Shown piece after piece: positions 15,829 through 38,218 of a stretch of DNA of 38,218 nt. How positions within the stretch are numbered: the stretch's first letter is position 1; the number at the start of each line of letters is the position of its first letter. A program made the position numbers and the translations under genes. The DNA comes from Perkinsus chesapeaki ATCC PRA-425 (lineage: Eukaryota; Protista; Perkinsozoa), in assembly GCA_013115145.1 (NCBI GenBank), contig JAAPAO010000338.1, forward strand, positions 1 through 38,218, read 5' to 3'. The notes below the pieces were generated by a model, which made no database searches, was not told the DNA's origin, and saw nothing but the letters and a program-made list of their open reading frames with translations.

Positions 15829-17816
15829 TTAAGCAGGAGTCGGGCGAGTCCATCCTTCGGGCACCGGGCCGTCATCATGGATTATCTCGCGGTGACAACT
15901 CCAGACGAGTTTGATGGCCTCCGGTGTACCGATTCCAGCAGCTCTCGGGTCACCAGCTGGTCCAAACCAATGATTCTGCGGAGCTCCGGTCGTTCTAGCT
16001 CTCACGCCAGCATAGGTGGTGCCATTGACAGTTACTCCAAGAACAGCGTTCTTCACTTGGGGATCATCGGAAATTACGGCGGCGGTGAGATGGGCGCTCA
16101 TCCTCTCAGTGGCATCCAAGACAAGCTGCAACTGATCATCCTTCCACTCTGTGCACACTTGGAAGGGCCCGAAAATCTCCCTCGTGCAGGTACCGAAGTT
16201 CTCGGGCTTAATAAGTTCCTCAAGTGGAACGAATACGGCAGTAGGTTCGTAGGCACCGTAGCATTCAGGGATAGTATGACCGGTAAGGGGCTTGCCACCA
16301 AACAGAACCTTCGCACCCGGGATCTTAAGTAGCTTTTCCTGATGGCCTTGTATGTCAGCCGTGGTATGGCTGAGAACAGGTCCGATGGTGAGATTGCTGA
16401 GGGACCTTTCCCCAGCAATCTGCCCCATCTTGTCGAAAATGCCAGCATTGACCCAATCGCTGTGGGCGAAGAGAATGCTCTGGGCTGAACACTTCTGACC
16501 GGTGTGAGCGTAAGCATCCTGGTCGCAGGTCCATGCGATGTGCTCCAATTGAGAGGCAAGGTTGCGAACAGGGCCGAGAATTTTCCAGTCAAAACCGGCA
16601 TCCTCGATCTTGATACGACCAGCTGTTACCTATAGGAGATATCATAACAGATTAGTACAACACCTCAAGACGCACTTTTGCCAGCCTTTCAGCCACACCG
16701 CTGGAGCCAGTGAAGAGTGTGAGACGAGGCTTGCCTTCAACGAGGAGGGCTTCAGCGACCTTCCCACCACAGTGGATCATATTGACATCGTTCGGCGGAG
16801 CTCCGACCTACAGACAATGTTACTAGGCCTACGAGAATAGTCAGTGGCGGTTTGCCTTATGCATGAGCCTCAGCCATTCTTCCATCACCATAGATGTCAT
16901 CGAAGCACATTTTAATGTAACGTGGTTGCCCATGTACAATGCTCCCATCAATTGCAGGACAGGGATTTCCAAGGGAAAGTTGAAAGGAGCGATAAGAGCT
17001 GAGGCAACACCCTACAGGCCGTCAGACACAGTGGCGAACTATACCTGTTGGACCGTAAGGCCACCTATAGCCTTGGCTTTGCTGGCCGTCCCTATCGCCA
17101 GAGACCATGAATCCCCGAGCCAAGAACCGTACCTGCCATCGCTGATAGCAGCTGAGGCGCTCGTGCACTCACCTGGTCCCCAGAAAAGTTCTCCAAAAAG
17201 ATACGGACAATGTCGACTTCGGCAACACTTTGGGCCCAACTCTTAGGAGCAACACGTTGAATGCATCTGAGTAAAATACGATCTCTTATGTCTCATCAAA
17301 GACGCGACCGTTTACTTTGCGAAGTGTTCTAAAACTTCTTTCTTCCTAAGCTCTGCGGCAAGCCTGTGTGAGATGTCACCATACATCCGATACCTCTCCA
17401 CGTTGCGCTGAGGAAAACACTCCAAGAGCATTTAAGACACTTCCCTCACCAGCGGGTTGTGAAGTCCGCTTTTAGGTACCGCTTGCATCGACTTCACGAA
17501 GGGGTCGAGCTCGCTGGTACTGGTGTCCGGCATTCTCAACATCGGCTTCCCAGTGAGGGGATCAACGATCTCTGTGGTCTTGGCAGCTGACACCCATTGG
17601 CCGTTCAAAAAATTGTGACTGACATGCGTTGTCAACGCGGAGGCACCGAGGTCCCGAGGGGAACACTTACAGGTTCACTGGCTCGCAGTCCTTCTTATTC
17701 GGATCAAAATTGATGAAGTCTAGGCTTCCAGCTACGGTGGATGTGAAAGTCCTAGAAAAGCGAGCCATCGCCCCGGCTGTCACCGGAACAAATCTTCTCG
17801 CGGGCGAAGACAGCAT
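15829..17816 (-). CDS. ALDH12: Delta-1-pyrroline-5-carboxylate / glutamate-semialdehyde dehydrogenase, ALDH12 type, multi-exon, probable mitochondrial presequence
   Basis: N-terminus MLSSPARRFVPVTAGAMARFSRTF (ATG at 17816), then HNFLNGQW...DPLTGKP...DPFVKSMQAVPKSGLHNPL. Catalytic GQKCSAQS. C-terminus GTTYAGVRARTTGAPQNHWFGPAGDPRAAGIGTPEAIKLVWSCHREII closely resembles plant ALDH12A1. Confidence 0.92.
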
Positions 17817-17926
17817 AATGAATATATAAGAATGCTGAGTGGAGGCTAGAACGAAGTGCAGCTCAACGACGGTATGCAGTCACGAAACTGGAACAACGCT
17901 TCAAATTAAAAGCCAATATAGCAGAC

Positions 17927-19524
17927 TCAGGTCGGAAGGGAATCAACGGTGGCGTGCAGGCTCTTCCAGCCATAGTTCCCCACGTCAACATCAGAAACAC
18001 GTTCGTTATTCTTAGATTTATCTACATTAATACCAGTTCCATCGCTACTGACCAATTCTCGATACGCGGCACGAGCCTGCGTCTCCGTCAGATAGCGCCC
18101 CAAACAGTAGTGGAGCCCAGAGCCAAACGACAAGGAGTTCACTTCCGTTTTCCTACTGGGCTTGAACTCGGCCGCGTCCTCCCCGAACGCGTTCTTGTCA
18201 ATATTTGCCGCGCCAATCATTATCAATAGCAGGCTGCCCTTTGGGATATCCACTCCTCCGATGGTCGCTCCTTCCTTTATAACACAGCGTGGATTCCGCA
18301 TCAGCGCTGGCTCGAGCCTCATGGACTCCTTGCAGAACTGAACGACACCTTCTTCATCATCCGGCTTCGGTAGTGTAGGTGAGTTGGATATCCTATAGGC
18401 CAAGTTAAGCATACCATTGGCAGCTGTCATGTTGACCATCAGCTGCACCATCACTATCAAGGCCTCCGCAGTCGATATCGTGCCCAGAAGCACCGCCGCC
18501 TTCAGCGACTCCGCCGGCGTACCGGGCATTGGGGACTGCAACGCCTCGTTGAGGGCTAGGAAGTACTCGGGCGCCTGTGCTAGGAGATGCGGGTACTCCC
18601 ACACGTGCATATAAGGACGCAATGTGGGCATCAGCGACAGATCTGGTCGGAGAATCTGTAGAGTTGGCCATAGACCAATCTCCATCACCATACGGAGTGT
18701 GGGACGAACACTGGCCACCAACCCTTTGATAAAATTCAGCACGGTTGTTGATGAGAGCTCTGGTCGGTGGCCGATGCCGCCAAGCGGGGAAACCAGTCGA
18801 ACTGCGACGTCATTATATCGGATGAATCTAACAGGGAGCTGTTGGCTGTATGGTAGTCGATAACATACCTATCAATAAGGTCCGGTTTTGGGTCCATGGC
18901 AATTCCAGCAATGCACAGAGATGTATACATATGCACCCGCTTGGCCCATTGGACTAAATCCCCACTAGCATGAAGTAAGGCACGATTGGCAGTGAACGCT
19001 CGATCTATCACTTCAGCATAGTTGTTCTTAACCCTCGAGGCAGCATAGAATCTGAAAGCGTGGTGGACTGTTGGTAAGCATCTCTGTACCTTTTAACTGT
19101 CTTAGCCACGCGGTCGTGGTCCTCTTTGTTCATTGTATTGAGGGCCACTAGCCTGCCGTCCACCCACGGGTTGCTGGAGAAGTACTCCGACTTGGCCGTC
19201 ACTTCCATTGCTGCCTCCATGGTGTGGACTAGATAGAAGTTGGGCTCGCTGCCTGTGACCTGACCAAGGGCCAAGTGAAGTACAATTTAACACTGCGAAG
19301 GTTACAGGAATAACAGGCTGGCCTGGAAAATCTTTATGAAGCTGCTTGTTGAACTCGACGTGATCCTTGCGAACTTCCGCGGACAGGAGCTTCTCGATTG
19401 GCACGCCTTTCGTATGTTTCGGGCCCTCTATTCGGCTGTGGTTGGATAGGAAGCGTCTGACTGTGTAAGCCAGGACTAGGGTGAGGAAAATAATTGGGAT
19501 CGTGAAGCCATCGAAGGTTATCAT
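17927..19524 (-). CDS. Cytochrome P450 with N-terminal membrane anchor, multi-exon (3 introns modelled)
   Basis: Heme motif FGSGLHYCLG, ExxR (ESMR), IGAANID...FGEDAAEFKPSR meander, hydrophobic N-terminus (FTIPIIFLTLVLAYTV). Splicing joins ORFs 19102..19524, 19008..19274, 18736..19011 and 17927..18742. Confidence 0.92.
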
Positions 19525-19727
19525 TGCAGGAGCCTGAGAAAGAGGAGCCTTGGACCACCCTACATACGGATCTTGCTGTGTACAATGACGAGAGCGAGAA
19601 GGGCGGAGCGAAGCACCGAAAATTTGATGCTTGGCGGAGCGACGCGGTCGATTTTCGATTCGTCAGCGGAGCGATGCAGAACCTTCGTGCGAGGACCAGC
19701 GGAGTCTTTTACACATCTTTGATAGAG

Positions 19728-21000
19728 ATGCAACCATCATTAGTCAAGTACAGCACTCCGATATCCATTGCTAACATTGGAGCATCTAAAGGTGGCAAGA
19801 AGGTAGCTGCCTTGTAAAGCGACTACCAAATTGGTTGCAGGGGTCCAAGACGAGCCCAAAGGCCTCCGTGGCATCGCAGGGAATACCGGGAATGACTCAG
19901 ACTGAGGATATCCTTAATTCGATATTACCGCCTAGGGAGTGGACCGATGAAGACAGGCTATGGGTGAGAGGGGACGCTTGATCGTTAAGGGCCGTGGAAT
20001 GGCACTTGAGAAATTGGGGATTTCCAATCACTCGGTCGAATTGGCCCATTGGGGTTTCCAGTTCCGTAGAATCACTTCGACGCATACGATTGTGAGAGCA
20101 ATGATATCCCGCTCGATCGGTTAGAGCACCTGGCAAGCAACGCATTCCAACGCTTTTCTAAAAGTCTTTTATAGCATTGAAAAGTGAGCTGAGCTTGGGA
20201 GTTGAGTCCTCCTTGAAATCCTCTTCAATTTCTGTTTTGCTACATAAACAGTTAAAGTGGGAATGGCGGTATGGCCAGCATATAGAACTAGCAGAGCATT
20301 GCTCTGAAACTTTGATAATAAGTATGATGATGCCACAAGGTTCAATATGTATCCTCGACCCCAGCAACTAGAGTGGACGTAGTGGCCCTGCAAGAGGAAC
20401 TGGACAAGAGGCTACAGGAGAGGCAAGCCAGAGAGACCGGCATTTGCCCCGTTCGAGAAGAGCTCTACGGACAAGCTTTCGATGAGCTGATTCGACAGGT
20501 ACTTTTGAACTGGGTTTTTGATCTCGTCATTTGGTCTGTTATTAGATTACCATTATCTGCGCCGAGCGAGGCCTATTGGCCCTCCGAGTGCGGGATGAAA
20601 TACGTATGACCGTTTCAGCTTATCAATCTCTCTATGAGTCATCTATTGCCTTTGGGATACGTAAGGCTTTGATGGCAGAGCAACGCCGGTATAATGAGAA
20701 GCGTGAAACGGAGGAGCTCACTGCTGAAATTGAGCGGCTAGAGGTACCTATAGAGTGGCACTATGTGGGAATGGGTTGTGGTAGAAAGCTGTTAAAGACA
20801 TGGAACAGAAGATAGTAGATATACAAGAGGGAGGCAAAGCGAGACGTAGTGAGAACGAGAAGAAGCATGACGAGGAGGTAGAGGCTGACGGTATCTTGTT
20901 GAGCGCATGGGGTCTATTGGGATAGGTTGATCGCCTACGTAAGGAGAACAATCAGTTCAAGGAGCAGCTGGAGGCCCTTTTGTCGGTGCCGAAGAAGTAG
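19728..21000 (+). CDS. DNALI1: Axonemal inner-arm dynein light chain p28 (DNALI1/IDA4), multi-exon
   Basis: MQPSLVKYSTP start, TEDILNSILPPREWTDEDRLW|VQYVSSTPATRVDVVALQEELDKRLQERQARETGICPVREELYGQAFDELIRQV, LRVRDEIRMTVSAYQSLYESSIAFGIRKAL. Ends QLEALLSVPKK* (TAG 20998-21000). Confidence 0.95.
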
Positions 21001-21118: not shown

Positions 21119-22939
21119 ATGCCAGCCAAGCGTCATTCGAATTCTCCGGCTCAATCAGCTACAGTGGGAGCGAAGAAGGCCAAGGTGTCTAACGGGCAGA
21201 AGAAAGTATCCTCGAGCGGCTTCAAGTTCCCTTTGGGAGCAACTGCTACGAGTTGCAGCGAAAAGCTGTTCGCCTGGCTCATTCATCCGGTCACTGTAGA
21301 AGAGTTCTTCGAGGAGTACTGGGAGCAGAAGCCCCTTCATGTGAAGCGACCGAGCAATAGAGACTACTACTCGGGGATCTGGACCAAAGCCATGGCAGAG
21401 AAGACCCTAGACAAGCACGATTGCTGCTTCGGTCAGACGGTCAATTTCGCTCGAGTGGAGGACGGCGAAAAGGTTATGTATAACGGGGAGGAGGGGACCA
21501 AGGCTACACCGGAGTACATGAAGGAGCGGTTTGATGAGGGGGTGAGCTGCCAGTTCATGCAGCCTCAGCGGTTCAGCAAACCGTGTCATGCTATGATGGA
21601 GCGATTGGAGAATTACTTCGGAACACTGTGGGGCGCTAACTCGTATCTGACGCCGGCCAACTCTATCGGCTTCGCTCCTCATTATGATGATGTTGAGGTG
21701 TTCATGCTGCAAACGGAAGGTAGCAAGCGATGGAGGCTTTACGACTCGCCTGATGATGACGGCCCGTTGCCGATGGAATATAGCAGGTGGAAGAAGAGGG
21801 TTGGTGATAGACTGATGAATGCATTTAGGGACTACAAGGAGGAAGAGCTTGGCCTTCCCTACTTTGATGAGGTTATTGACCAGGGAGATCTCTTGTACAT
21901 ACCCAGAGGTAGTAGTGCGGGGCTCTCCAGGTGCGTATGTGATGCTGCCATCGGATAGGCACCGTTCATTCCGGCTGTGTGTCTCCTGAGGGTTATTCCC
22001 ATCACCTCACCGTTAGCACATATTATCATAACTCTTGGGGAGAGCTCCTTCAGAATGTCCTTATACCGGGGGCATTGGGTAAGGCTATGAAGGAGGATCT
22101 GGAGTTCCGAAAGGGAGTGCCGGTTAATTGGACAAGGTAGTTCGGGTGTAGAAGGCTGGGAATTGAAGTGTTCTTGGTAGGTATATGGGCCGATTGATGG
22201 CACCAGTAACGGCGGAAAAGGCTGCGTTAGATGAAGGTGGTGACGATGACAATGCTAGTGATGATACCTCATCTGAGGAAGAGCTGCAAGGGGAGGAGAG
22301 CAGCAGCTCGGTTGATGATGATGAAGAGATAGAGAAGGACATAGAGGCGGCCAAGAAGCCGCCACAAGGGGAGACTCAGGCGGATCCGGAGGCGTTGATG
22401 CGTGCGAGGAAGGCTTTCAAGATTCATGTGAAGGAGCTCATTGCTAAACTAAGCGAGTTTGTGGACGAGGATGACGCTGCTGACCAGACCGCGGTGAGAC
22501 CTCTCGTCATGGTTATGAAGTTTGGATCTCCTTGCTTTAGGTGGATTTCATAGCCCTGCGAACACCGCCAGCTCCCAGGGCAGGCGAGGTAAAAACGCAT
22601 GGTCCGAGCCCGGCGGCTCAGAGCAACCTATTGGTGAGGTGGCGGAATCCGGCCTGGGTACGGATAGCTGTAGAGAGCAACGTTGACACTTTGGAGTCAA
22701 CCACGCTTATCTTCCACTGTGGGGATAATAAGGTGTCTCAACACATGATGTCGGATGATGCGAGCCAGAGGACACCCGGCACGCTAGAGCTGGAGGGGGT
22801 GGACAAGGTGGCTGCCCTCTCGGAAATGTATAGGGTTTGGCCGGATTGGACGGACATGCAGAAACTGGGCCAGAGCTTGACCACTAGCCTTTGGGAGGAG
22901 GGAATAGTTCAGACCAAGGTTCCCACTGAGTTGAAGTAG
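21119..22939 (+). CDS. RIOX1: JmjC ribosomal oxygenase / demethylase NO66-like, multi-exon
   Basis: FAWLIHPVTVEEFFEEYWEQKPLHVKR, GANSYLTPANSIGFAPHYDDVEVFMLQTEGSKRWRLY (HxD), GDLLYIPRG|TVH (third Fe ligand in the next exon). Basic N-terminus and acidic insert. Confidence 0.9.
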
Positions 22940-23063
22940 TTTACCGTTATATAGCGACTGTCTGTTTCTCACTGCACGTTTTGTGCTGTACGTTGACTTC
23001 GAGCCATGAGGAGTTGTGTTGTAGCCGTGTCAATTGATGAATAGAAATAATAAGAACTTTGGT

Positions 23064-26000
23064 ATGTCTTCGAAAAGAGATGCACTTCGACAGCTACGTG
23101 AGCTGCGTGCTGGTGGGGTAAAGAGATCCGAGCAGTACGAAGTTAGGGACAGCGGTGCAATAGTTGAGGAGGTAGAGCATGCTGGGCTGTGCTCGGTAAG
23201 GGACTGGCGGCTTAGGTGGATGAGGAGGAGTATCGTAAGCTATGCAAGGCTAGAAGGAACGATAACTTTGTGGTGGATGACCAGGGCGGCGATGGGGGAG
23301 GGTATATAGATGATGGTCAGGAGCTGTGGGACGATCAGGTGGGTTGAAAGATACGCGTAGAGGTAGGATGAGGTTAGGAGGAGTATGACTCGGAGCTGGA
23401 GAAGCTGGATGACGAGGAGGAAGCCGGCGGATCTAAGAATGTGCGGATCTTCGGCTATAGATTGTGGGAGCTTTGGTGACAGGCTCGCAAGATGTTGGAG
23501 AGGGCTCGCCGACAGAGGAAGGCAGAGAGAGAGGCTGCAGCTAGGAGAATGCAAGATAGGGAAAAGGGACAAAGAGGAATTGCACAATTCTTCAAGGTGA
23601 TCTGCTTGTTATTACGTTTCACATCATCACCATAATAATTAATGATGATTGCGTCTAATAGCGTGTCACATAAGTAAGGTATTTCAGCATGCTCTGTTTG
23701 CTGGATAGGGAAAGGACCAAGCTCTCGGTCTCGTATGGGTGGCCAAACGGCTGTTTGTTGTGTAGGGTGGAACCAGAAGTAAGCCAGCAGCATCCCGAGC
23801 TAAGGAGGAAGAGTCAGCTCCTGTGGACACTGCAGCTGTAGATGACATGCTTGATGGCTTTGAGGATGAACTCATGGCGATGGACGAAGCAGGGCCTGTT
23901 GAGACTGTTCCCCGCAAAGTGATGCTTATCAAGGATTATAGGGAATTGTCGGAACCCTTTTATGAGCAGGTCACCACCAGCGTTGCTGCAAGCATAGCAA
24001 GTAGGAAGCGACCGGTGGAGGACTGTGAAGTGGCTGACACTACTGGTGTGAAGATTGAAGAGGATAAGCTTCCTGTTGGCGAGGCACAGGAGGTAGCCCG
24101 GGGTTGCTGGGAGAATCTGGTCAGATATTGCATGGTCCTCCAGGCAACTAGCACTGTTGAGTTGCAGAATGAAGCGATCAAGAGGCGTCGGACAAGCATG
24201 GATGATGACTCTGACGAGGTGGCAAAGGAAGCCAGTCATCCCGTTGAGGCCAAGCTTGAGACGAGTCCCTCTGGACATGAGGCGAAGAAAGGTGCGGCTA
24301 GTGGCATTGGGGGGAGGTAACTGTGAGCTTTAGGTTCCACTGCTGCGGCAAAGGGTGCTCCGAGTGAGCCTACGGTAAAGTTCAACGACTCTCCTCAGAA
24401 AGTTGTAGATTTTGGCGACTCGTGGCTGATCACAGACGAAGTTGAGGATGCAGCAGCTGAGGCCACCTCTAGCCCTCGAGGTGGTTCTCACATCGTTTGG
24501 CGTGTTGTAATTCCTCTCTGTCAGGAGCATCTGCGGAAGACCGAGGCCTGGACGCAGTTAAGGAGGAGGATGGCTCGCTGATGATGTGATTGGAAGCATT
24601 TTAGCGTGTCCTATAGTTCATCGATCAGGTATCTTTTGGACGTCTATGAGGGCACCCTACCGGACAAGTCTCCAGCACTGTTCCTCTTTGGTGAGACTAT
24701 TGCAGGCTTAGAAGGGTCAGGGAAATCTTAGGCAAAACGAGGCGAAAGGAGAGCAAGCCGGCGAAGCAGCAGCAACAGTTCGAGTCCTGTTGCATGGTCG
24801 TTAGCAATATCATGCGGAACTGCTTTTTCCTGCCGGTAAGGGGTGACGTTTGTGCTGGGCGTAGCGCGGGTGGACTTCAGCGACAGCAATTTGAGGACGA
24901 AGGGGAATGCAGGAAAGAATGCTTCTCCATTATGCAAGAAGTAGGCAACGAAGAGGGAGGCTGTTCACAAATGAGTTATCGTGCTGCTACTCAGTTTGAA
25001 GCATTGCGTAAGAAAAGTGGAGGAGCATTGGCTGCGGTTAACAAATATAAATGCAAAGTTGTGTGGCGAAACTATTGCTTTGATCAAGTCCATGGTATCC
25101 CACATGGCCGTCTAGGGTAAGTGGCATCTGTGGTGCTTTGACCCTGGCCATACCGTAGTGCTTTAGGTTTCTGAAACTGGTTTACTCCTCTTCATTACCT
25201 CCACTACCAGCAGGGTTAGAAGGCGAGTCCTTCTCTCACGTATTTGGTACCAATACTTCCCTCACTGAGCTCTTCCTAGTCAAGCGTCGAATCATGGGCC
25301 CATGCTGGATTCAAGTAGATGCAGGTGCTTATGAGCCCTCCACTGGTAAGCTCTTTAATGATGTTCCTGGTGAACGGTTATACTTTCTTATTTCAGCATT
25401 GGGCAAGCTGTCATGGTGCGCCCGTGAAGTTCGAGTTACCTCTGGGACAAAGCAGATATCTGTGGTGAGCATCTTGCCCTGGTTCTGCTATGATATTGGA
25501 TGTAGGTTTCTGCTGATGCGATGCCATTGCCGCCACCACTTTCTATAATGAGCTTATCGATCAAGACCAATACGGTTAAACCTACTAAGTCTTCCGCAGC
25601 CAAAGGTAAGCCTGACCTCTGGTCAGAGTCCAGCTAGGTATGTAGCGCGGTAATAGGTAAAGGGTCGGCAGCCCAGCAGCAACATGAGATAGCAGTTGCA
25701 GCCTATTACCACAACCCCAGTCTTGATATAGACGAGGCCAGTGAGGAGTGTCTCAGGAGAGGTGGGCGACGACGTTGAGTGCAGAAAAACACTCAGACGC
25801 TCACGGCCTCTTTGAAGGTATGCAGACCTTCATGGCAGTCACAAAGATAGAAGGCGTACCGTTTCCCAAGGGCCCTCTGGCTAAAGTAAGGATAGTTCTT
25901 TGGATTACTCCTAAGAAGCTACACTCAGAATGTCGTGGTGGAATCAAGCGAGCGTGCTCTACTGAATCATCTGGCAGCAATGGTCACCAGGGCCGATCCG

Positions 26001-29000
26001 GATATCATATTGGGCCATAATATGTGAACAGTTCCTCTGGCGATTCGGAGATTTCATGACATTTGTGTAGCTTCGGATTTGGCCTGGATATCTTAGCTCA
26101 GCGAATGCAGCACCACAAGCTCCCGGCGTGGCATAAATTCAGTCGGCTTAAGAGGTACACCGCGTCAGCGCCCGTTGGAAAGAAACTTGACGTTTGCTAA
26201 GGCAATCTGGCGTTCTGCCATTTGGTCAAAGTGGGAAGAAGCGTGATTGCAACAGCCATACTGGTGGCGGGAGCATGTGGCTTGGGCGCAGCCTTACAGC
26301 CGGCCGGCTGGTGTGTGACACATACTTGAGCGCTCGGGAGTATGTGAAGATGACCACATACGATCTGGGAAGCCTGTCGATGAGTCTGCTGAAGGTGAGC
26401 CATCCGCACTGGTCCAGTCCAAGCAGTGTTTGTGGAGTCACATTCTTCAGACTCCTCGGGCGCCGGTCTCGTTGGATTCGTTGGTCAAGTTCTACGAGGA
26501 TCCGAGAGCTTTGTCGGCTCTGGCCGAGCATACCCTTACCGATGCCGTGTTGCAGCTGCGTGTTGGATGGGCATTGCAGGTGGGTTGGAGAGGGAATGTC
26601 GGAGTGGTGCAGATGATGGTGTAGGTCCTATCTTTAACGCGGCAATTGACCAACTTGGCAGGGAATCTTTGGAGTCACTCGCTGCAGAATAAGCGAGCTG
26701 AGAGGAACGAGATACTTCTGGTCCATGAATTCCATAGGTAGGGTATTCCCAGCAGGTGCTTCTTAGGGATGGATTTGATAGGAAAAAGTTTATAGTGCCA
26801 GACAAGGAGAGACCTGGTGACCGACGAGGCCAAGCAAAGGGTGACGTCTTCGATGAGGACGGTGGTGATGCTCATAGCAAGCCAGCGGCTGGGCCTCGGA
26901 GGAAGAAGGCTGCGTAGCCTGACATATCTACTAAAGTGGTAACCCCTGTCTTCCAGGTATGCCGGTGGTTTGGTGTTGGAGCCCAAAGCTGGCCTTTACG
27001 ATAAATTGGTGTTACTGTTGGATTTCAACTCACTTTATCCATCAATCATACGAGAGTATAATATCTGCTTCACCACCGTTGACAGGTGAGAGGTGGGCAT
27101 TAAGATTGTTTCTATTTGGGTGTCCTTAGATTGGATGCCCATGATTCGGCCCTAGAGGGGAACGAAGGGGTTATTCCGGAGCTGCCATCCCGAGCACCGG
27201 GCGAGCGCGATGCTATCCTGCCGCAGGTCATCACACGGTTGGTGGAGAGCAGGAAGGATGTGAAGAAGTTATTGAGGACATGTAAGCCTGTCTTGGCGGA
27301 TCTGGTAGAATGAGCGAACACACAGGTAACAATTCGAAGTCGGCAAATCAGCTAGATATCCGACAGAAGGCGTTGAAGCTCACAGCCAACAGCATGTACG
27401 GGTGCCTTGGATTTTCCAATAGTCGCTTCTACGCGAAGCCGATCGCCGCTTTGATTACACGAACTGGCCGAGAGACGTTGCAGGTGGGCGACGAGCTCTG
27501 TTCATGGAGACTACCTTCTTTGCTTCCAGGCCACGGTTGACATAGTGGAAAATCATCTTCGCTTCGATGTTGTTTACGGTGATACAGATTCTATATTCGT
27601 GCACACGGGTAAGCCTGTCAAAGGAGCCTGCTCCGGTTACCACAGCTCGGTTGCCAGGTACGGAGGCGTTTGACCAGGCAATGCGAGTTGGTGGTCAAAT
27701 CATGGCGGAAGTGAATAAGCGATACAAGAAGCTTGAACTAGATATTGATGGCGTTTTCAAGAGGCTTCTGCTGTTAAAGAAAAAGAAGTATGTTCAAATT
27801 GGCCGGGAATCTCTGTTCGATCAGTCACGCTCGTTAATAGGTACGCAGGAGTGAAGGTTATCGACTGGGCGAAAGGTATTGCTGAGAAAGAGTACAAGGG
27901 TCTCGACCTCGTCCGCCGTGATTGGTGTCCGCTGTCCAAAAAGATGGGAGATGAGGTGCACCACTTCACTGCTTGCTGTTGATGGACCTTTTAGGTCCTA
28001 CGTTGCCTGCTAGGCTTAAGCGCAGAGTCGCAGGCTCCGGCTTCATCCGAAATTGGCCCTGCTGATGTCGATAGATCTGCCCAGGAAGCTGAACGAGTAG
28101 TGGAATGGCTTCACGACTACGTCAAAAGTGTGAGCCTTAAAATGGACAATGGGGAGGTGAGTCTTACCTATGCGTTTCCGTGGTGTGTTCAACACACTGT
28201 GTTGGCATGTCTACTGTTATAGATACCTCTCGAAGATTATGTTATCACCAAAGCGTTGACGAAGATGCCGGCTGATTACCCAGATGCCAAGAGCCAGGTA
28301 ACCTTTCATGCTTGTAGCTTGTCTCGTGCGCATGCGTGCAAAGTTTTTGACCGCATTTTCTATCTTATAGGCGCACGTGATGGTGGCCAAGCGGATGATG
28401 GATGAAGGACATGTTATTCGACCTGGTAACGAGATCCCTTATGTCATTACACTACCAGTGGATCCCGACGCCAAAGAAGATGATGGTGCTGACTCGAAGC
28501 CGGCAGCAGTGGTGGGGACAGGTTTGTATATGTTAGCAAGTCCGGCAGTTATCATTCTTCTCACCAGATTCTCAATCTGTAGCTGCTAGAGCTCGGAGTA
28601 TCGACGAGGTCAGGAAGATGGGCCCGTCACGTCTGCCTATTGACACGCAATGGTAAGTTCTCTCAATACTCGTTACAAGATTCGGAGGGAGTATATTTTC
28701 GGGAAAGTGGATACGATTACACTTTCCTTATTCATCATTAACATTATCGTCAACAAGTATTTTCGAAGCGGCTAAGCTAATATGCAGGAGCATCTGTATT
28801 TATCAGGTACAAGACTCACCAGATCCACCCACCACTGGTTCGTATTTGTGCTCCTGTGAGTGGGACTGATGCAGCTCATCTTGCCGAATGCTTGGGTCTA
28901 GATCCCAGCAAGTTTGCCGCTATCGGGATCAATAATAATGGTAAGCATTGACTTCACGTTTGGCCAGACTCTCTGTGGGATAGGAGCTGATGATGGCGAT

Positions 29001-29710
29001 GATATTGAAGCGGTGATGGCATCTCTATCACAAAAGATTGATATTGATACCAAGTATTCGGATGCCAGGAAGTTCTTAGCAGGATCTGATCGACAGTTCA
29101 AATGCCATAAATGCAAAACAGGTGAACCCTTACGGGCTGCTACTTGCTCCCCATCGACTCGGCTTGCTTAGCCTGCCATATAGCGGACGCAATAAAGCAG
29201 AAGGAGTGCATCAAGTGCTCGGCAGAGATATCCAGCGCTTTGCTGCGCAACCTTCTCACAATGGTGAGTGGAGAGCTGGAAGCCGCAAGGAATCGCGTGT
29301 ATCTCGCTTCAGGTTCTCCGGAAGGTAACACGAGAGGCCGGTGCAGGTTGGGTTCGCTGTGACGATGAAGGATGTGGGAGGGCTACTCGTCAATTGCCTC
29401 TTGGTAAGCTTGAAACATTCGGATATCTAGGAGCATGCGACCTCTCAGGGACTTCGCGATGCCCGTTTGGTGGTTGCCGTGGGAGACTCCAGCAGTTGCC
29501 CGGTCATACCAACAGGGCACTACATCAGGTGAGTTTTATAGCGGCTGAGTCACTTATCATTCGCCGTTTCAGATCCTGTCCTATCTTCGTGAGTTGACAG
29601 CTAAGCATCGCCCTGAATGTGAAGATATTCCGTCACAGTATTTATCTATGAATGCTTATGATGTCGTAAATAAGACAATCCTGTTCTCTATGTTCGTTAG
29701 AGGAGGCTAA
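23064..29710 (+). CDS. POLA1: DNA polymerase alpha catalytic subunit, many short exons
   Basis: N-terminal [20 protein letters not shown]|[16 protein letters not shown]-family motifs [94 protein letters not shown]-terminal Cys zinc fingers. Likely stop TAA 29708-29710. Confidence 0.95.
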
Positions 29711-30290: not shown

Positions 30291-33200
30291 ATGGAACTAC
30301 GCAGCTACCAGCTGGAGGTCCTCGGCAAAATCCGCGAGCACAAGTCTACCGTAGCCTTCATGCCGACAGGATCTGGCAAGACGCTCGTCGCTGTTTGGGT
30401 GCTCAGAGAGCGCCTCGCCCTGATTGAGAGGAATGTTGCCAATGGGCAGCCTAAGAGGCTCTGTGTCTTCAGCGCTCCCAACAAGGTTCTTTGTCTTCAG
30501 CAGGCTGACTACATTGCCAGTAACATTGGTGACGACCAGCGGTGTCGCATTCGTGTTTTGACGGGTGAAACCCCTGGCATAGACAACTGGCTCACGAGAG
30601 ACTGGAAAGAGGAGTTTAACAAGACAGAGGTCATCGTCTGCGTTCCTGAGATCCTTCGTCGAGCCCTTGCTTCGAATTTCGTGGCATCTGACCTCATCGA
30701 CACTTTAATTTTCGATGAGTGCCACCACTGTGTATCGAAGAAGGGCGCCAACAGCGGCCATCCCTTTTGCCAGCTCGCACAGCTGGCCAGAGGGGCCGAG
30801 AAGTTTGTAGGGCTCACCGCTAGCCCTATCAACTGCAAGAAGATTGATGTGTTGAAGAATATGCAGCAGCTGAAAAACGTGCTGTCTTTAAACGGCGAGT
30901 GTGAGATTGTTAGACCGACAGCCTCGCATGCTGAGTTAATGAATCACGTATACACACCAGAGCCCGTGCTTAAGACCCACGCCTCCGCTAGCTACCAGCC
31001 CAACTGTGACCGTTTCGATGACTGTGAGTTTCCGAACCAACGCATACACAAGCTCATGTGTGGTGCTTACAAGAGACTGTCTTGGCTGGAGGAGTACTGC
31101 GCAATACGTAAATCTATGAGGCACATAGACGCGGACTACTCTGAGATCGTGCAGCTGGTTAGCGCCAACCTAATGGATCTCCCTCACAGTGAGATGTCCT
31201 ATTACTGCGAGCTGGTTGGGCAGTTGGGAAAGGTGCTCCATGAGGTACTTTACCATCGCTTGAGAGGTTCGATTATGTGTTCCATTTAGGGTGGCAGCCG
31301 AGCTGCGTTACACGCCTTAAAGTATATCTGTCGCACTAATGATGAGATCCGAGAGGACTGTGCTATTCCTGAGTTCTACAACCAGGCGGAGGCAAAGATC
31401 GAACCCGGCCGTCTCAAGGTGAGCTTCATTGTGCTCTGCGCGGTTGCTTTGATGATTCTATCCCTTCAGTTCCGGGTCAAGCGACTTGAAGAGCACATTG
31501 CCGAGTTCCCTCTTTGGCCCGGAACGATGGCCAACGCTGTGAGACAGTCCCTGTGGGAGACTTGCGAAGCCGTGTGCCTGCATGCTGGTCTCGAGCTGGT
31601 GGAAGTCGCCGAGAACATCGACATTCCTGGAGCATCTTTAGAAGATTTGAAGCGCTATATAACCACCACTTTTGTGCCACAACTCCTCCCGCTTGCTGTT
31701 GACGCTGACAAGCTCCTCACCCTTCGTTCGGTACTCGGCTTGGATGACTTGGCGCATTCAAAGTACTCGGCTACGATAGTCTTTGTTGGTGAGCGCCTTA
31801 TGGCTCGAGCTCTTGCAGCTACCCTCAGCTTACATTACTGTGTGGGTGGTAACAGTGAGCGAGTGAGCAAGCAAACTAAAGCCTTGGAACGCTTCAAGGA
31901 CATAGCAGAGGAGGGCAGAGAGCACGCAGTCCTCATTGCCACGTCGGTGTGTGACGAGGGCGTTGATGTGCCAATATGTGATTGTGTGCTGATGTGGGAT
32001 GTCCCCCCGAATGTCCGTAGCTTCATCCAACGTCGTGGTAGAGCGAGGAAGTTCTATCCTAAAAAATCCGAGCTCCTTGTTCTTGTTGAGGCCGCTAATA
32101 AGGCGCTTGCCAAAGCAAACGATGCGCTGCGAAAATACGATTTACAAGAGAAACAGATGGCTAGCTTGGCCGATTGTTGGCAGGATGGGGCCAGCTCTGA
32201 TGATGACGACTCTGATACCGAGATCGACCCGAAAGTGGTTGTTGGCCGTGAAGGTGTTAGAATATCTTGTCGGCATGCCAAGGGCACTCTTCACGAGTTT
32301 ACATCCTCACTGAGGGCCACCGATGAGTTCTTTACTCCAGCTCCAAGGTTCTTCTGTGAAAAGCGAGATGAGCGCTTTCGGACTACTGTGATGCTTCCAT
32401 CATCCGTTCACCCACCCATAGCACGGTGGGCGATGAGCAGGTGGCATTCAACCAAGGCCCGAGCCAACCGTGAAGCCAGCGCCCGTCAGCTGCAGAAACT
32501 AACCATGCTTCCTTGGGTCACGCCTCAGTTCAAAAACAAGTATGCAGCGGGCAAGGCTGACGGTGTTAACGAGGAACTTGTTCCTCCTCCCGATCTCCTG
32601 GACTTGGCCATACAGCAACTCAACCAGCGACAGTCCAATCCCGCCCCGGCATTCGTGAAGCCAGTTGACGACGTCTCCGTTATGTATGCGTATCGTTTGG
32701 GTGCTCAATGGCATCAAACCGGAATTGATCTCCCGGAGCGGCTCGCTCGGTGGAAGGAGCTAACTCGAAAGCGTGTTGACACTTTGGGTGAACTCTGCAT
32801 TCTCACTCCTGACCGCCTGCCTCAACTGGTCATCGAAGCCGTTAAAGAGATACCGATTTCTGCCAGTGGTCTGGGCAGGACGGATGCCAGGCTTGGTACG
32901 GTGAAGATAACTCTCACACCCGAGGGATCTGCAACCGACGGCAGCGGCGCAATGGGAGTTAACAGGGACCTTATGGACAAGCTCTGGGGCTTTTACCGTC
33001 AAATTTTCTCCCACGCAGAAGGTGGTCAAGTCATAGAGGGCTGGACAGGGTGCGATGCTGCCGAGCCCTTCTATATGATAGTTCCCAGCGGCACCAGTGG
33101 TATGGTTGAAATGGCACGTATCCTTGATGCATTTTACGATGACCCGAGGCTCCTGGTTGTGTCATACGGCGTGTACTATAGTGTGCCTGCAAACGTTCCT

Positions 33201-33398
33201 TTTTTCATCATAGTGGTCCTTGAGTTTAGTTATTCCTTTGTACGACTGTGTTCATCATCGTCTCATCGTGGCGTGTCGATGTTAATCAGCCCTTAGCATG
33301 ACCAGCGTGAAGACGCGGCGTTCCGTATCCCTTGCTACCTCTGTCATCTTGTACTTCTCGAACGCAACAAACCACACTGTGAACCGGGTCTCATTTAA
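30291..33398 (+). CDS. Dicer-like protein N-terminal half: DExD/H helicase + DUF283 + platform-like segment; no PAZ or RNase III detected (3' end 33296-33405 uncertain)
   Basis: LRSYQLE, MPTGSGKT, IFDECHH, GLTASP, LIATSVCDEGVDVPICDCV, SFIQRRGRAR. DUF283-like AKGTLHEFTSSLRATDEFFTPAPRF...FRTTVMLPSS...TKARANREASARQLQKL. Platform-like LCILTPDRLP...GTVKITL...FYRQIFSH...FYMIVP. Introns 31245-31289 and 31419-31469. Confidence 0.85.
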
Positions 33399-33692
33399 GA
33401 AATGATTCGGTTTTGTCAGCGTATGATACGCTGCCTATCCAACCTGAAGGTTATTAAACTTGAGAGTCTCAAGTCGAAAAGATTAAGAAAGCCGTAAAAA
33501 AGTCATCCTTTTTGGATGGCTTAGTAGTACGAAATAACAGTAACATAGAGAGAAAAGTAAGTGCCTGGTCTGGCTCAAGAGTTACGCACACTGTGTACTG
33601 TATTATACACGGGACAAATAATGATCAGGGCCGAGCTAGGACAGCCTCGATACGGAGTGGGCTACGAAATTCGAGAAAAATTGGTGACTGAG

Positions 33693-35456
33693 TTAATCAC
33701 GTAAACACAGCCACGCTATAGTGTGCACCGTGAAACCGCTGCCGAAAGTTACTTGGACCAATGCTTGGCCAGGACGAAGGTCACCTGTCTGTTCAATGAA
33801 CCTCGTTGTTACCAAATAGAGCTGGCAATAGTATTACCATAGTGGTAAAGAGTTAGTCTAGAAGGCAACATATCACGGTCAGATAGATTGAGGTTAGACT
33901 GCACCCTGTCTAGAATCTTGCGCCCACGCGTATGGATAGCGAAATGCTGAAACAAGTTCTTCAAGTTGGGCGCATTTCCATCAATGCCGATGATCTTGTC
34001 AATGTATACAGAAGGAGTTATATATCTCACCAGGCGACGGAAATTCTGTACCATGGTCTTGGATGCGATATCTGCTAGTGTCTTATCAATTCGGACTCCG
34101 TGGCAGCCATTATCGTCCTCATCTTCGTATACACAGTCATACTCTGCATCACCAGGGTCCTGATGCCTCACCATTTCAATAAGCTTATACTTGGCGCGTT
34201 TGTCTTGCTTATTGGTCAAGAGCACAGCCGCGGCACCGCAGCGGAAAATTGCGTTGCCCACGAGGAAGGCTCGCTCATTTCCTTCATAGACACCAAGGGT
34301 CATACATTCAAGGGCGATAACGACACAATTGCTGTCTTTAGGAGTCTGCAATAGTCGAATAGCTAGATCAGTTCCAACACCGTTGGCACTGCAACCAGTA
34401 CCTACAACACAACATCCGTTCAGTCCCTCTACATCTGGCACTTAGGATTACCCGCGATATTGTAGGTAATAATGTCAGACCTCAGTTTGAACTTGTTGCA
34501 CAGCATCGCGCAAAGCGTCGGGGTCGGCGAAAAAATAGAGCAAGTAATAACGAGCATCTGACAAGAGACGACGTAACGAGGTATCCAAATGGCATCAGCC
34601 AAGCCCTACGTCAATATCATGCGGTTTCAAGCCTGTCTTATCGAGGAGTCCTTGAAAGACAGTCGTTAAGGTGACATCTGCCTCATGTCGAGCATCAGCC
34701 ATAGTGTGAGTCCACATCTTGCCAGTTTTCAGCGTTTTCACCTGGAATACCGTAATAAACATATACAAAGGGATCAGTAGAAGTTCGATTATAGGACTAC
34801 AGTGTAACCTTACCACGCAGGGAGGCCATGCCGTGCTATCGCCGATATCCGCTTTCTCCAGCAATCTTGACATGAAATCACGGCTTTCCTTTGTACAGTT
34901 TGGGTTGTTGTGCATAATCTTGATGACGTCATCCTTCGAGATACGCCAGGACTGATCATAAACAGAAGTCATAGGATCAACTTTACCTGGGGAGGTGATG
35001 TCAGTGGGGGTCTTACCTGTGGTGGCTCGAATTCGTAATGATCGATACAAAAAGCGTCACGAATCCGCTCAGAACTAAGTCTCCGACGGAGGACCACCAG
35101 AATTGCTGTACAGGAGCATAATATCGAAGCTGAGCAGCGGTTTGTTAGAGCCTTAAAGCTTACTATCCCCCGGTACCTTGGATAGCTGAAAATATCCAGC
35201 AGTAGGACAGAAATGCGATGAAGGATGCGACTATTATGTAGCTTGTCGCTCCATCAAAATTAGTAATGAGCCTAAGACAATGTCGTCGTTTGCAAGAACT
35301 CCACGTACATGGGACTCACCTATGTTTCATTAGGTTATAGAAGTTGTTGAGCTTGACCCCACGAACGACTTCATCGTACAGCTGCTGGTCCGTCGATGGC
35401 TCGGCTGATAGGGAAATGGCAATATTTTGCGGCTTGATTAGATCCTCACCGGCCAT
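33693..35456 (-). pseudogene. Plant-type FAE1/3-ketoacyl-CoA synthase (type III PKS fold) with premature stop and 1-nt frameshift near the 3' end (pseudogene or sequence error)
   Basis: ATG 35456 (MAGEDLIK...), two N-terminal hydrophobic segments, LVITCSIFSPTPTLCAMLCNKFKLRSD, YNIAG|TGCSA (catalytic Cys), NAIFRCGAAAVLLTNK, HFAIH (His), LYHYGNT (Asn). Then TAA at 33809-33811. The expected tail RFIEQTGDLRPGQALVQVTFGSGFTVHTIAW continues in a shifted frame to TAA 33693-33695. Confidence 0.75.
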
Positions 35457-36406: not shown

Positions 36407-38218
36407 TTATTCGATGAAGCGTGATGTTAACGATTGCGGATTGTGGACTGTTCGGAAAGCTCGGATCTTAACGATTGTATCTGGTAGTTCCGAGGCGCTA
36501 CTGGAAGGTTGTTCCATTACGAGATCACTCCTCGATAACGTGTCAGCAAACCAAGAAGTAGGAGAAGCTCCATCGTACAGAATCCCACCAACACCGAATG
36601 GGGAAGCGTCGACTACGATAGACCAACGGGAAGACGACCACGATGCACAGGGAAATACCCTGGAATAGAACGATGATGATGATGAATCGAAGTGAACGTC
36701 GATAAACGCCTTCAACCAAACCAAACTGCGCCTAATTTGGTTAACGTGGATCCAAGACCAGTTGCAACGCTCAGCTACCCCCAGAGCACCCCAGAGGGGG
36801 GATACAAAGGCGCACACGTACGGGACGATTTGACCAATCCAAGCGAACTTGCCGCAGACCTTACGGAGGAGCTTCACCGGAATACGGACCTTGGCCAACG
36901 ATGTCTCGACCAGCGCTAAGGCTGACCTGAGCTTCTCGTCGGGAACATGTAAAATAATACCAGCAGGATGAATATCAAAAATAACTCCAATCCACTTGAT
37001 AGGGAAGGGATATTGCCTCTTGGCAACAGCAAGTCTGAAACCGAGTGCTATCCACAAAACGAGAGGAAGACACAGCACCAGACGAGCATAGCGAGAAGAA
37101 GGAGCCCGAGCTTGCGCAAAAGGGTCGTCGACAAAAACATTCAGAGAAAAAGATGACTTGGAGCTCTCAGGATGGTCGGACGGGGCTTGACACAGACCAG
37201 AGGCGAGCCTCGAAATAAGAGCTGCCTCCCTTCCCCAAATCAAGGGAGAAGATCGGACCCCGAACAGTAAAGTGTTATATGCATACCAACGACCATCAAA
37301 AAATACTACATGGAACGGTTTCTCGCGCTCCATAAGCGGCACCAACTTGAAAGCATTAGAAAAATCGACCGAGATAGCTTGTAAAGAACCACCAATAGAC
37401 AACTGTTCCTCCCGCAAAGAAAGAAGAGAGTCAATTGCATCGGACACGCGAGGCAAAACAAGATGCTCAGGAAGCGCAATAGAGGCGTTTAAGTCATTTT
37501 CCGAGGCGTCACAAATCAGACGAAACTGGTCAGTACCTTTTTTGGGTACCAAGCCCAGCTTAGTGCAAACTACACGCGAACAATCAAGAAAAGATAGCAG
37601 ATCTGAGATGCTGCTGAAATCCTTGCAAAAACCCTCATCAACCTCTTTAGCCAGGAGACTCTGGGTTACCACTGGCATGGATTCGGCACTCTGATAATTA
37701 GAAAGAGACGAAGGATCAGTGAAATAATCGGAGAATTCAAGAGTTGAACACTCAAAACAATCCACAGAATTACTCACACCATCGCGTGATGGGAAAACAT
37801 TGCAACACGGGATCGGACAAGCAATGCCAACGGGGGCGCCACTTGTAAACCACTCAGCGGCTATACAATCAGGATCGCGAGTAGAGCGACAAAGAGCAGA
37901 CAACAGCCGCCCCAAAACAGGCGAGCAACTATGAGACGGCTGCAAGCAAGAACTATCACAATGAAGAATTTGAGCAAGCCCTTCTCGGGCCGCAGTGATA
38001 ACAGAGACTACAGATGGCAACTCGAGGGGACTAGGCGCAGTAAGCAAGGCGTCAACTACGGAAGGCTGAGACAAAAGAAGAGACTCCAATAAATTTCGAA
38101 TAGATGAAAAGACTCTGATAGCTTGTTCATCGAACAGAGACGCAGTGACAAGTCGGAACGCCGCAAGCCACCGACTGGTTCACTCGACAAGCCAGACGTG
38201 GGGCGACGAGTCTGACCG
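36407..38218 (-). mobile_element. DIRS-like (tyrosine-recombinase-class) retrotransposon fragment: RT plus partial RNase H; probably extends beyond the window end
   Basis: Intronless 560-aa ORF with DPD..AEWFTSGAPVGI, LGLVPKKGTDQFRLICDAS, SVDFSNAFKLVP, LLFGVRSSPLIW, catalytic FVDD, WIGVIFD and RNase H start IVVDASPFGVGG. Strong A-rich skew on the + strand unlike neighbouring genes. No integrase or recombinase seen in the window. Confidence 0.85.

What the first reader, a model, noticed from the sequence alone, without database searches (positions are those of the whole stretch)
30291..33700. Stand-alone 'half-Dicer': intact helicase, DUF283 and platform, but no PAZ or RNase III - possible split Dicer system
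Seen: all helicase motifs are intact (PTGSGKT, DECHH, TAS, QRRGRAR). They are followed by a DUF283-like block (~32260-32520) and a segment resembling the Dicer platform (LCILT..LP...GTVKITL...FYRQIFSH...FYMIVP, ~32790-33090; human Dicer as I recall has FGILT..P...GEVTISI...LHQYIFSH...YCVLP). All three frames hit a stop by ~33405, and only ~300 nt of AT-rich DNA remain before the convergent KCS 3' end at 33693, too little for two RNase III domains. Established: canonical Dicer is helicase-DUF283-platform-PAZ-RNaseIIIa/b; helicase-less Dicers exist (Giardia, trypanosomes, ciliate DCLs), and RIG-I-like DRH helicases lack DUF283 and platform. Inference: this lineage may encode the Dicer motor and dsRNA-binding half separately from a nuclease half, or use it as a nuclease-free dsRNA sensor.
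Basis: partly seen in the sequence, partly recalled or inferred. Interest (0 to 1): 0.75.

Follow-up and report, generated by a model that had tools for sequence, protein, structure and literature searches.

The report
Truncated Perkinsus Dicer-like gene
This is the front two-thirds of a Dicer-like gene that is full-length, with its RNA-cutting domains, in two sister Perkinsus species. Here it is cut off mid-exon at a chromosome breakpoint, so it is a truncated Dicer and not an ancient two-piece Dicer system.

Summary
A three-exon gene (30291-33296, +) encodes a 969-aa protein with an intact DExD/H helicase, a DUF283 domain (Pfam above cut-off) and a platform-like fold (weak model). It has no PAZ or RNase III domain.

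The "split Dicer lineage" reading does not hold. Orthologs in P. marinus and P. olseni (74-77% identical, same flanking genes upstream, same intron positions) run on in the same uninterrupted exon into RNase IIIa and IIIb. A tandem paralog, DCL2, follows them.

In the window, homology stops at nt 33159/33160. What follows is the unique 3' flank of a convergent KCS gene. The missing ~6.5 kb (DCL1 3' half plus DCL2) appears nowhere in the 41.7-Mb assembly. The genes that follow DCL2 in P. marinus lie inverted inside another contig, between unrelated genes.

The retained part shows no faster protein evolution than its orthologs. The truncation is therefore recent, or the remnant is still under selection, or the join is an assembly error. 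Reads were not available to decide.

My odds:
- Real but recent or non-maintained truncation: about 0.45.
- Assembly artefact: about 0.3.
- Functional nuclease-free half-Dicer: about 0.2.

Earlier scan notes report separate RNase III-like genes elsewhere in this genome. I did not test them.

The parts
30291..31244 (+). Exon 1: start codon and Hel1 of the Dicer-type helicase (motifs I PTGSGKT, II DECHH, III TAS)
   Evidence: Pfam DEAD E 4e-15 and ResIII E 3e-12. It is 79% identical to P. marinus DCL1 exon 1. The exon ends at a GT donor that is conserved in P. marinus.
31245..31289 (+). Intron 1 (45 nt, GT..AG)
   Evidence: Read directly from the sequence. P. marinus DCL1 and DCL2 have an intron at the same position.
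31290..31418 (+). Exon 2 (43 codons, start of Hel2i)
   Evidence: 80% identical to the matching P. marinus DCL1 exon; the frame was checked.
31419..31469 (+). Intron 2 (51 nt, GT..AG, in frame and free of stops)
   Evidence: P. marinus DCL1 has a 46-nt intron at the same position.
31470..33159 (+). Homologous part of exon 3: Hel2i/Hel2 (motif VI QRRGRAR), DUF283 and the platform-like domain
   Evidence: 75% identical over 563 aa to P. marinus DCL1. Pfam Helicase_C E 9e-13. The best PDB sequence matches are Dicer helicase-DUF283 constructs and full Dicers, ahead of RIG-I.
32277..32504 (+). DUF283 / Dicer dimerisation domain
   Evidence: PF03368 scores 36-40 bits against a cut-off of 23.7. It is the only such hit in the whole assembly.
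32670..33158 (+). Platform-like domain (predicted fold only, weak model)
   Evidence: AF2 model residues 141-303 align to the platform-PAZ-connector region of eight different Dicers, Z 4.7-7.7. No non-Dicer hit covers this part in the top 50. There is no HMM support.
33159..33160 (.). Breakpoint where homology to every ortholog and paralog ends, inside what is one continuous exon in P. marinus and P. olseni
   Evidence: tblastn matches to four comparators all stop at 33158. The nucleotide alignment loses identity after 33159. The orthologs continue with 'EIGLTV...' and the RNase III domains.
33160..33296 (+). Read-through tail of 45 non-homologous codons plus a TAG stop
   Evidence: It matches nothing in P. 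marinus.
33160..33692 (.). Unique, AT-richer spacer: the 3' flank of the convergent KCS gene
   Evidence: The query 33120-33700, which spans this spacer, is single copy in the assembly. GC is 41-47%.
33693..35050 (-). Convergent 3-ketoacyl-CoA synthase (FAE1/KCS-type) gene; not syntenic with the Dicer locus of P. marinus
   Evidence: PF08392 E 6e-37 and E 6e-10 on two exon ORFs. It is absent from the 23-kb P. marinus locus.
36410..38089 (-). Reverse-transcriptase-like ORF of a repeated retroelement at the contig end
   Evidence: RVT_1 E 3e-4, below the Pfam cut-off. Copies lie on contigs C72, C480 and C2925.
21119..29707 (+). Upstream JmjC and DNA polymerase alpha genes, collinear with the P. 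marinus Dicer locus
   Evidence: tblastn collinearity with L008 12-8734; Pfam labels of the P. marinus genes come.

Best explanation
The locus is this species' ortholog of Perkinsus Dicer-like 1 (DCL1). The genus is confirmed here; earlier scan notes call the species P. chesapeaki. In sister species DCL1 is a PAZ-less Dicer: Hel1-Hel2i-Hel2, DUF283, a platform-like domain, RNase IIIa and RNase IIIb. It is the first of a tandem DCL1-DCL2 pair lying between the DNA polymerase alpha and Y-family polymerase genes.

In this genome a rearrangement cut the gene at nt 33159/33160, right after the platform-like domain, and joined it to the 3' flank of an unrelated convergent KCS gene. The DCL1 3' half and all of DCL2 were removed from the locus.

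Shown: orthology, the breakpoint, the absence of the nuclease half from the assembly, and rearrangement of the neighbouring block.

Inferred: the junction is real in the DNA, and the event is recent or confined to one allele. This fits an intact remnant that shows no excess protein change.

As encoded, the 969-aa product could still bind dsRNA and hydrolyse ATP, because isolated Dicer helicase-DUF283 fragments do so in vitro. It cannot cut RNA. I do not think it is a maintained, separately evolved half of a two-gene Dicer.
For: Orthology: The gene is 74-77% identical to P. olseni FOZ62_027803 and to P. marinus DCL1, against 45-53% to DCL2. The upstream JmjC and Pol alpha genes are collinear. 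Both intron positions are conserved.

Full-length orthologs: They carry PF00636/PF14622 RNase III domains after the same '...ILDAFYDDPRLLV' sequence, without an intron.

Sharp break: tblastn to four comparators ends at 33158, and nucleotide identity ends after 33159.

Nuclease half absent from the assembly: PF00636 and PF14622 find nothing at E<=1. P. marinus DCL1 and DCL2 proteins match only 31512-33173. A filter-free profile search of the window and C3282:1-28000 finds no remnants.

Junction DNA: It is single copy, without Ns or repeats.

Neighbouring block: The three genes downstream of DCL2 in P. marinus sit on contig C3282 at 498-8171. They are inverted relative to the next syntenic block at 17645-19959. 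Within that one contig they are bounded on both sides by unrelated genes. The ancestral DCL2-g1 adjacency is thus also broken in a contig interior.

No sign of decay: Tajima relative-rate counts are 17 vs 24, 11 vs 16 and 16 vs 21, none significant. There are no stops or frameshifts in 924 codons. dN is 0.16 with dS saturated.
Against: Complete lack of decay also fits an assembly error or continued selection.

The cut falls at a predicted domain boundary, which is what a functional truncation would look like.

Argonaute/Piwi genes are still present, so the organism presumably still needs a dicing activity.

At least two or three rearrangement steps are needed to explain both contigs.
Confidence: 0.45

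Rival explanations
1. Assembly artefact. The organism has a normal full-length DCL1 and probably DCL2. Contig C2605 is a false join at 33159/33160, and the real continuation of about 6.5 kb or more was not assembled, or was discarded with a purged haplotig.
For: The break is mid-exon and the gene is otherwise pristine and evolving at the ortholog rate. This locus is badly assembled in other Perkinsus genomes too. The GenBank P. marinus copy lacks the equivalent of window 30758-32004 compared with a Logan assembly of the same species. The P. olseni pieces sit on contigs of 3.5-3.8 kb. The assembly is fragmented, with 3544 contigs in 41.7 Mb. Argonaute genes are retained.
Against: The junction is unique sequence with no repeat or N, which is not where false joins usually arise. 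A displaced unique 6.5 kb should turn up on some other contig, but it is nowhere in the assembly. The far side of the missing segment is also broken inside a long contig: g1 abuts unrelated sequence, and the polymerase-Y gene abuts another gene. Real rearrangement has therefore occurred here.
Confidence: 0.3
2. Functional stand-alone half-Dicer, the reader's idea restricted to this species. After losing the nuclease halves of both DCL genes, the species keeps the helicase-DUF283-platform protein under selection. It would act as a nuclease-free dsRNA-binding ATPase or sensor, perhaps together with a separately encoded RNase III protein.
For: The ORF, splice sites and all ATPase motifs are intact, and there is no rate acceleration. 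The cut lies at the end of the predicted platform-like domain, so only whole domains remain. Isolated Dicer HEL-DUF283 constructs bind dsRNA at nanomolar Kd and hydrolyse ATP (PMC10159624). Their sequence is the best PDB match to this protein (9mw6, E 4e-21). Earlier scan notes report a conserved 449-aa PAZ-plus-one-RNase-III gene and other cryptic RNase III-like genes in this genome; I did not test these.
Against: Sister species have the fused enzyme, so any split would be young and specific to this lineage. The new C-terminus is 45 codons of read-through from intergenic DNA. No expression or population data exist. By its own note, the separate PAZ-RNase III gene is conserved within Perkinsus, so it did not arise to complement this truncation. 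Lack of decay is explained equally well by a recent event or by an artefact.
Confidence: 0.2
3. The gene continues through a new intron that starts near 33157-33160 and leads to distant RNase III exons.
For: GT dinucleotides occur at 33157 and 33160.
Against: Introns in this gene are 45-51 nt. The orthologs have no intron at this point. No RNase III-coding sequence exists on the contig or anywhere in the assembly.
Confidence: 0.03

Closest known systems
Perkinsus DCL1: P. marinus PMAR007697 with its upstream exons, and P. olseni FOZ62_027803
   Same: It is the same gene by descent: 74-77% identity, the same upstream neighbours, the same two intron positions, and the same helicase, DUF283 and platform-like region.
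   Different: The orthologs continue for about 470 aa with RNase IIIa (degenerate signature) and RNase IIIb, and a tandem DCL2 follows them. The window copy stops at the platform-like domain and is followed by a KCS gene.
Canonical Dicer / Dicer-like enzymes (human Dicer, Drosophila Dcr-2, Arabidopsis DCL1-4)
   Same: It has the Dicer-type helicase and DUF283, and its best PDB sequence matches are Dicers, ahead of RIG-I. The platform-like fold sits at the correct position.
   Different: It has no PAZ by Pfam, here or in the orthologs. This copy has no RNase III domains and no C-terminal dsRBD.
Engineered Dicer HEL-DUF283 fragments (AncD1D2, PDB 9mw6; PMC10159624)
   Same: They have nearly the same domain content as the encoded product and are its best solved-structure sequence match (E 4e-21). 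They show that such a fragment binds dsRNA and hydrolyses ATP on its own.
   Different: They are laboratory constructs of animal ancestral sequences, not natural genes, and they lack the platform-like domain.
RIG-I-like receptors and Dicer-related helicases (RIG-I, MDA5, C. elegans DRH-1/DRH-3)
   Same: They are nuclease-free dsRNA-dependent ATPases of the same helicase clade, and they match Hel2 at E 1e-7 to 1e-4.
   Different: From general knowledge, they have a C-terminal regulatory domain and no DUF283 or platform. No such C-terminal domain was found here at E<=1. This gene descends from a Dicer, not from that branch.
Helicase-less minimal Dicers (Giardia Dicer, PDB 2FFL)
   Same: The Giardia platform-PAZ region aligns weakly to the platform-like model (Z 4.9).
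   Different: The architecture is complementary: Giardia keeps platform, PAZ and RNase IIIa/b and lacks the helicase, whereas this copy keeps the helicase and lacks the nuclease.

Membership tests
Dicer / Dicer-like enzyme | Dicer/RIG-I-type DExD/H helicase (Hel1, Hel2i, Hel2) with motifs I, II, III and VI | tested here: met
   Pfam DEAD, ResIII and Helicase_C all score above their cut-offs. The motifs were located. The top PDB sequence matches are Dicers.
Dicer / Dicer-like enzyme | DUF283 / Dicer dimerisation domain after the helicase | tested here: met
   PF03368 scores 36.3 bits (hmmscan) and 40.1 bits (six-frame search) against a cut-off of 23.7.
Dicer / Dicer-like enzyme | Platform domain | tested here: inconclusive
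   There is no HMM or sequence match. A weak AF2 model (pLDDT 52) aligns to Dicer platform regions only, Z 4.7-7.7.
Dicer / Dicer-like enzyme | PAZ domain | tested here: not met
   PF02170 gives no hit in the gene or in its full-length orthologs. The only PAZ hit in the assembly is on the Argonaute contig C255. Only about 130 of about 280 platform-PAZ residues align structurally.
Dicer / Dicer-like enzyme | Two RNase III domains forming the dicing centre | tested here: not met
   None was found in the window or the assembly. They are present in the orthologs.
Perkinsus DCL1 orthologous group (membership by descent) | Highest identity to DCL1 rather than DCL2, with shared synteny and intron positions | tested here: met
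   Identity is 74-77% to DCL1 against 45-53% to DCL2. The upstream genes are collinear. The intron positions are conserved.
RIG-I-like receptor / Dicer-related helicase | C-terminal RNA-end-recognition (regulatory) domain and absence of DUF283 | tested here: not met
   No other Pfam family was found at E<=1 beyond the helicase and DUF283, and DUF283 is present.
Natural split (two-gene) Dicer system | Motor half and nuclease half encoded separately as a conserved arrangement in related species | tested here: not met
   P. marinus and P. olseni encode the fused enzyme in one exon.
Natural split (two-gene) Dicer system | Physical or functional partnership with a separate RNase III protein | not testable with these tools
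   This needs co-IP or genetics. The candidate genes come only from earlier scan notes.

The most novel reading that the evidence does not exclude
This Perkinsus species has truly lost the RNase III halves of both tandem Dicer-like genes. It keeps the helicase-DUF283-platform remnant under purifying selection as a natural nuclease-free dsRNA motor or sensor. The remnant may feed a separately encoded PAZ-RNase III protein and the retained Argonautes. That would be a Dicer caught in the act of splitting into two genes.
Probability: 0.2. Interest if true: 0.75.

Novelty: new member of a known kind. Interest (0 to 1): 0.3.

Why it matters
If the junction is real, one Perkinsus species lacks both canonical Dicer nuclease modules while keeping its Argonautes. 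That would raise the question of what makes its small RNAs. It would also offer a natural test of what a Dicer helicase-DUF283-platform module does alone. If the junction is an artefact, the finding only flags a misassembled locus.

Either way, the comparison shows that Perkinsus Dicer-likes are a tandem pair of PAZ-less, helicase-bearing enzymes. It also shows that published gene models for them are fragmented. This is useful for annotating RNAi in the sister lineage of dinoflagellates.

Tried and rejected
- **Remnants of the nuclease half.** I looked on this contig and on the syntenic contig with tblastn and with a filter-free HMM. Nothing scored below E 0.99.
- **Repeat at the junction.** I tested whether the junction lies in a repeat. 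It is single copy.
- **Linking the two contigs.** I tested whether the right end of C2605 (retroelement) abuts the left end of C3282. There is no DNA or protein similarity between them.
- **Independent data for this species.** Exact-sequence look-ups of four ORF versions returned nothing. A word search with the P. marinus RNase III half found only P. marinus and P. olseni. A JGI metagenome scan found nothing.
- **dN/dS.** Synonymous sites are saturated, so no ratio could be computed.
- **Intron-to-distant-exon model.** Rejected, because no RNase III exon exists in the assembly.
- **RIG-I/DRH membership.** Rejected on the presence of DUF283 and on orthology.
- **Searches I chose not to run.** The joined 969-aa spliced protein was not sent to any search or folding tool. 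Exons were searched by reference, and the joined CDS was used only inside local scripts for alignment and counting. The large representative-protein search was not used, because family and orthologs were already clear.


Full report
**What is there**

The + strand between 30291 and 33296 carries a three-exon gene:
- exon 1: 30291-31244
- exon 2: 31290-31418
- exon 3: 31470-33296

The two GT..AG introns are 45 and 51 nt. The spliced model has 969 codons and contains PTGSGKT, DECHH, TAS and QRRGRAR.

I searched the exons one by one by reference. Pfam gives DEAD (E 4e-15) and ResIII on exon 1. On exon 3 it gives Helicase_C (E 9e-13) and Dicer_dimer/DUF283 (E 6e-9, 36 bits against a cut-off of 23.7). 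In a six-frame search of the whole assembly, this is the only DUF283 locus. The best sequence matches among solved structures are Dicer helicase-DUF283 constructs (AncD1D2, 9mw6, E 4e-21), Arabidopsis DCL4 and mouse and human Dicer. All of these rank ahead of RIG-I.

Beyond DUF283 nothing matches by sequence. A five-sequence AlphaFold model of 32250-33158 is weak (mean pLDDT 52; residues 141-250 reach 60-76). Its residues 136-303 nevertheless align only to the platform-PAZ-connector part of Dicers:
- Among Foldseek's top 1000 chains, the 20 best are all Dicers, Z 5.0-7.7.
- In an unfiltered comparison with 48,161 PDB representatives, the top four are Dcr-2, human Dicer platform-PAZ cassette, mouse Dicer and Dcr-1. 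DCL3, DCL4, Giardia Dicer and DCL1 rank lower. No non-Dicer chain covers that part.

Only about 130 of about 280 chain residues align, so PAZ is largely missing. The platform rests on a weak model.

**The orthologs are full-length Dicers**

A word search with exon 3 found P. olseni FOZ62_027803 (74% identity), P. marinus PMAR007697 (69%) and a Logan contig that proved to be P. marinus. All of them carry RNase III domains (PF00636/PF14622, E 1e-10 to 1e-22) after DUF283.

The P. marinus locus runs in this order: JmjC, DNA polymerase alpha, DCL1, DCL2, two small genes, Y-family polymerase (IMS). DCL2 is a tandem paralog, 42-53% identical to DCL1.

Three lines of evidence make the window gene the DCL1 ortholog:
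- Window 21119-29707 is collinear with the JmjC and polymerase alpha genes.
- Window 30291-33158 matches DCL1 at 75-79% identity.
- Both intron positions are shared with P. marinus DCL1 and DCL2.

Dicer-like proteins in P. marinus have been noted before from BLAST (PMC6027434). Earlier notes of this scan name the genome as Perkinsus chesapeaki. I confirmed the genus only.

**The break**

In P. marinus and P. olseni the sequence '...ILDAFYDDPRLLV' runs straight on, in the same exon, into 'EIGLTV...', RNase IIIa and RNase IIIb. In the window, tblastn matches to all four comparators stop at 33158. Nucleotide identity ends after 33159.

After the break come 45 non-homologous codons and a TAG stop at 33294. 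The other two frames stop at 33179 and 33211. The stretch from 33160 to 33692 is AT-richer DNA, and the region 33120-33700 is single copy in the assembly. It ends at the stop of a convergent FAE1/KCS gene. The contig then ends in a retroelement that has copies on three other contigs.

**Where the rest went**

The nuclease half is not found anywhere in the assembly:
- The 41.7-Mb assembly gives no hit to PF00636 or PF14622 at E<=1.
- P. marinus DCL1 and DCL2 proteins match only the window gene, up to 33173.
- A filter-free profile of four RNase III halves finds no remnant in the window or in C3282:1-28000.

The three genes that follow DCL2 in P. marinus lie on the 88-kb contig C3282 at 498-8171. 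They are inverted relative to the next syntenic block at 17645-19959. A 9.5-kb stretch with ankyrin and LRR ORFs separates the two blocks. On the other side, the block is flanked by the start of an unrelated gene at C3282:1-232.

So about 6.5 kb, the DCL1 3' half plus DCL2, is missing. Both of its ancestral neighbours are joined to other, unique sequence inside contigs.

**Is the remnant decaying?**

It is not. There are no stops or frameshifts in 924 homologous codons. Tajima relative-rate counts against a DCL2 outgroup give:
- 17 window-specific vs 24 P. marinus-specific changes
- 11 window-specific vs 16 P. olseni-specific changes
- 16 vs 21 in the N-terminal half

None of these is significant. 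dN to P. marinus is 0.16, and synonymous sites are saturated. With that much neutral divergence available, even a short period of unconstrained evolution would show. The truncation is therefore very recent, or the remnant is still constrained, or the junction is not real.

**Weighing the explanations**

The points below favour a real junction:
- It is unique sequence, with no repeat and no N.
- The displaced 6.5 kb is not on any other contig.
- The far side of the deletion is also rearranged within a long contig.

The points below favour an artefact or an unassembled intact allele:
- The gene is in pristine condition.
- The cut is mid-exon.
- The assembly is fragmented.
- The locus is also mis-assembled or mis-modelled in P. 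marinus and P. olseni.
- Argonaute and PAZ/Piwi genes are retained.

The points below favour a functional remnant:
- The cut leaves only whole predicted domains.
- Isolated Dicer helicase-DUF283 fragments are active dsRNA-binding ATPases (PMC10159624).
- Earlier scan notes report a conserved PAZ-plus-one-RNase-III gene elsewhere in this genome. I did not test this.

My odds are about 0.45 for a real but recent or non-maintained truncation, about 0.3 for an assembly artefact, about 0.2 for a functional nuclease-free half-Dicer, and about 0.03 for a hidden intron.

**Limits**

I therefore could not fetch P. olseni DNA or the KCS neighbourhood in other species.
- No data of this species were found in the protein collection or the metagenomes.
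- The joined spliced protein was not sent to any search or fold tool. It was used only in local scripts.

**Verdict**

The split-Dicer lineage interpretation is not supported. The feature is a truncated member of a known family. Interest is modest unless read-level data show that the junction is real and the remnant is expressed.

Noticed in passing
L008 9265-12397 compared with L009 3916-8168 (both P. marinus DCL1): The GenBank P. marinus assembly lacks the equivalent of window 30758-32004, which is present in a Logan assembly of the same species. The annotated PMAR007697 (798 aa) is therefore an N-terminally truncated model of a protein of about 1388 aa, and the 182-aa gene upstream of it is its first exon.
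   Followed up: partly
P0001 (P. olseni FOZ62_027803, 1027 aa): This partial gene model reads from the DCL1 helicase through RNase IIIb and on into the start of DCL2 ('MKLREYQTEV...'). It fuses two tandem genes.
   Followed up: no
P0001, P0002 and P0003: RNase IIIa signature region (alignment): In the full-length Perkinsus DCLs, the first RNase III domain has 'EKHEPLGC' (DCL1) or 'ERYEYLGN' (DCL2) where the canonical signature ends in LGD. The second domain has the canonical 'NERLEWIGDAVLG'. RNase IIIa may be catalytically impaired. Pfam finds no PAZ and no C-terminal dsRBD in any of them.
   Followed up: no
G000 contig C3282:1-19959 (L013-L015): The block of the Y-family polymerase gene and two small genes is inverted relative to P. 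marinus. A 9.5-kb insert with ankyrin-repeat and LRR ORFs separates it from the next syntenic block.
   Followed up: partly
window 36410-38218: A reverse-transcriptase-like ORF (RVT_1 E 3e-4, below cut-off) lies on the minus strand at the contig end. Copies on C72 are 96% identical, on C480 65-69%, and at the start of C2925 99%.
   Followed up: partly
G000 C3210:7802-8153 and C255:875-4067: Two loci have Piwi domain hits above the Pfam cut-off, and one of them also has PAZ. Argonaute genes therefore persist in an assembly with no Pfam-detectable RNase III domain.
   Followed up: no
whole assembly G000: Neither RNase III Pfam model gives any six-frame hit at E<=1 in 41.7 Mb. The assembly thus shows neither a Dicer-type nuclease domain nor any other recognisable RNase III, such as an Rnt1/Drosha-type enzyme. 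This could reflect search sensitivity, assembly incompleteness or real loss.
   Followed up: no
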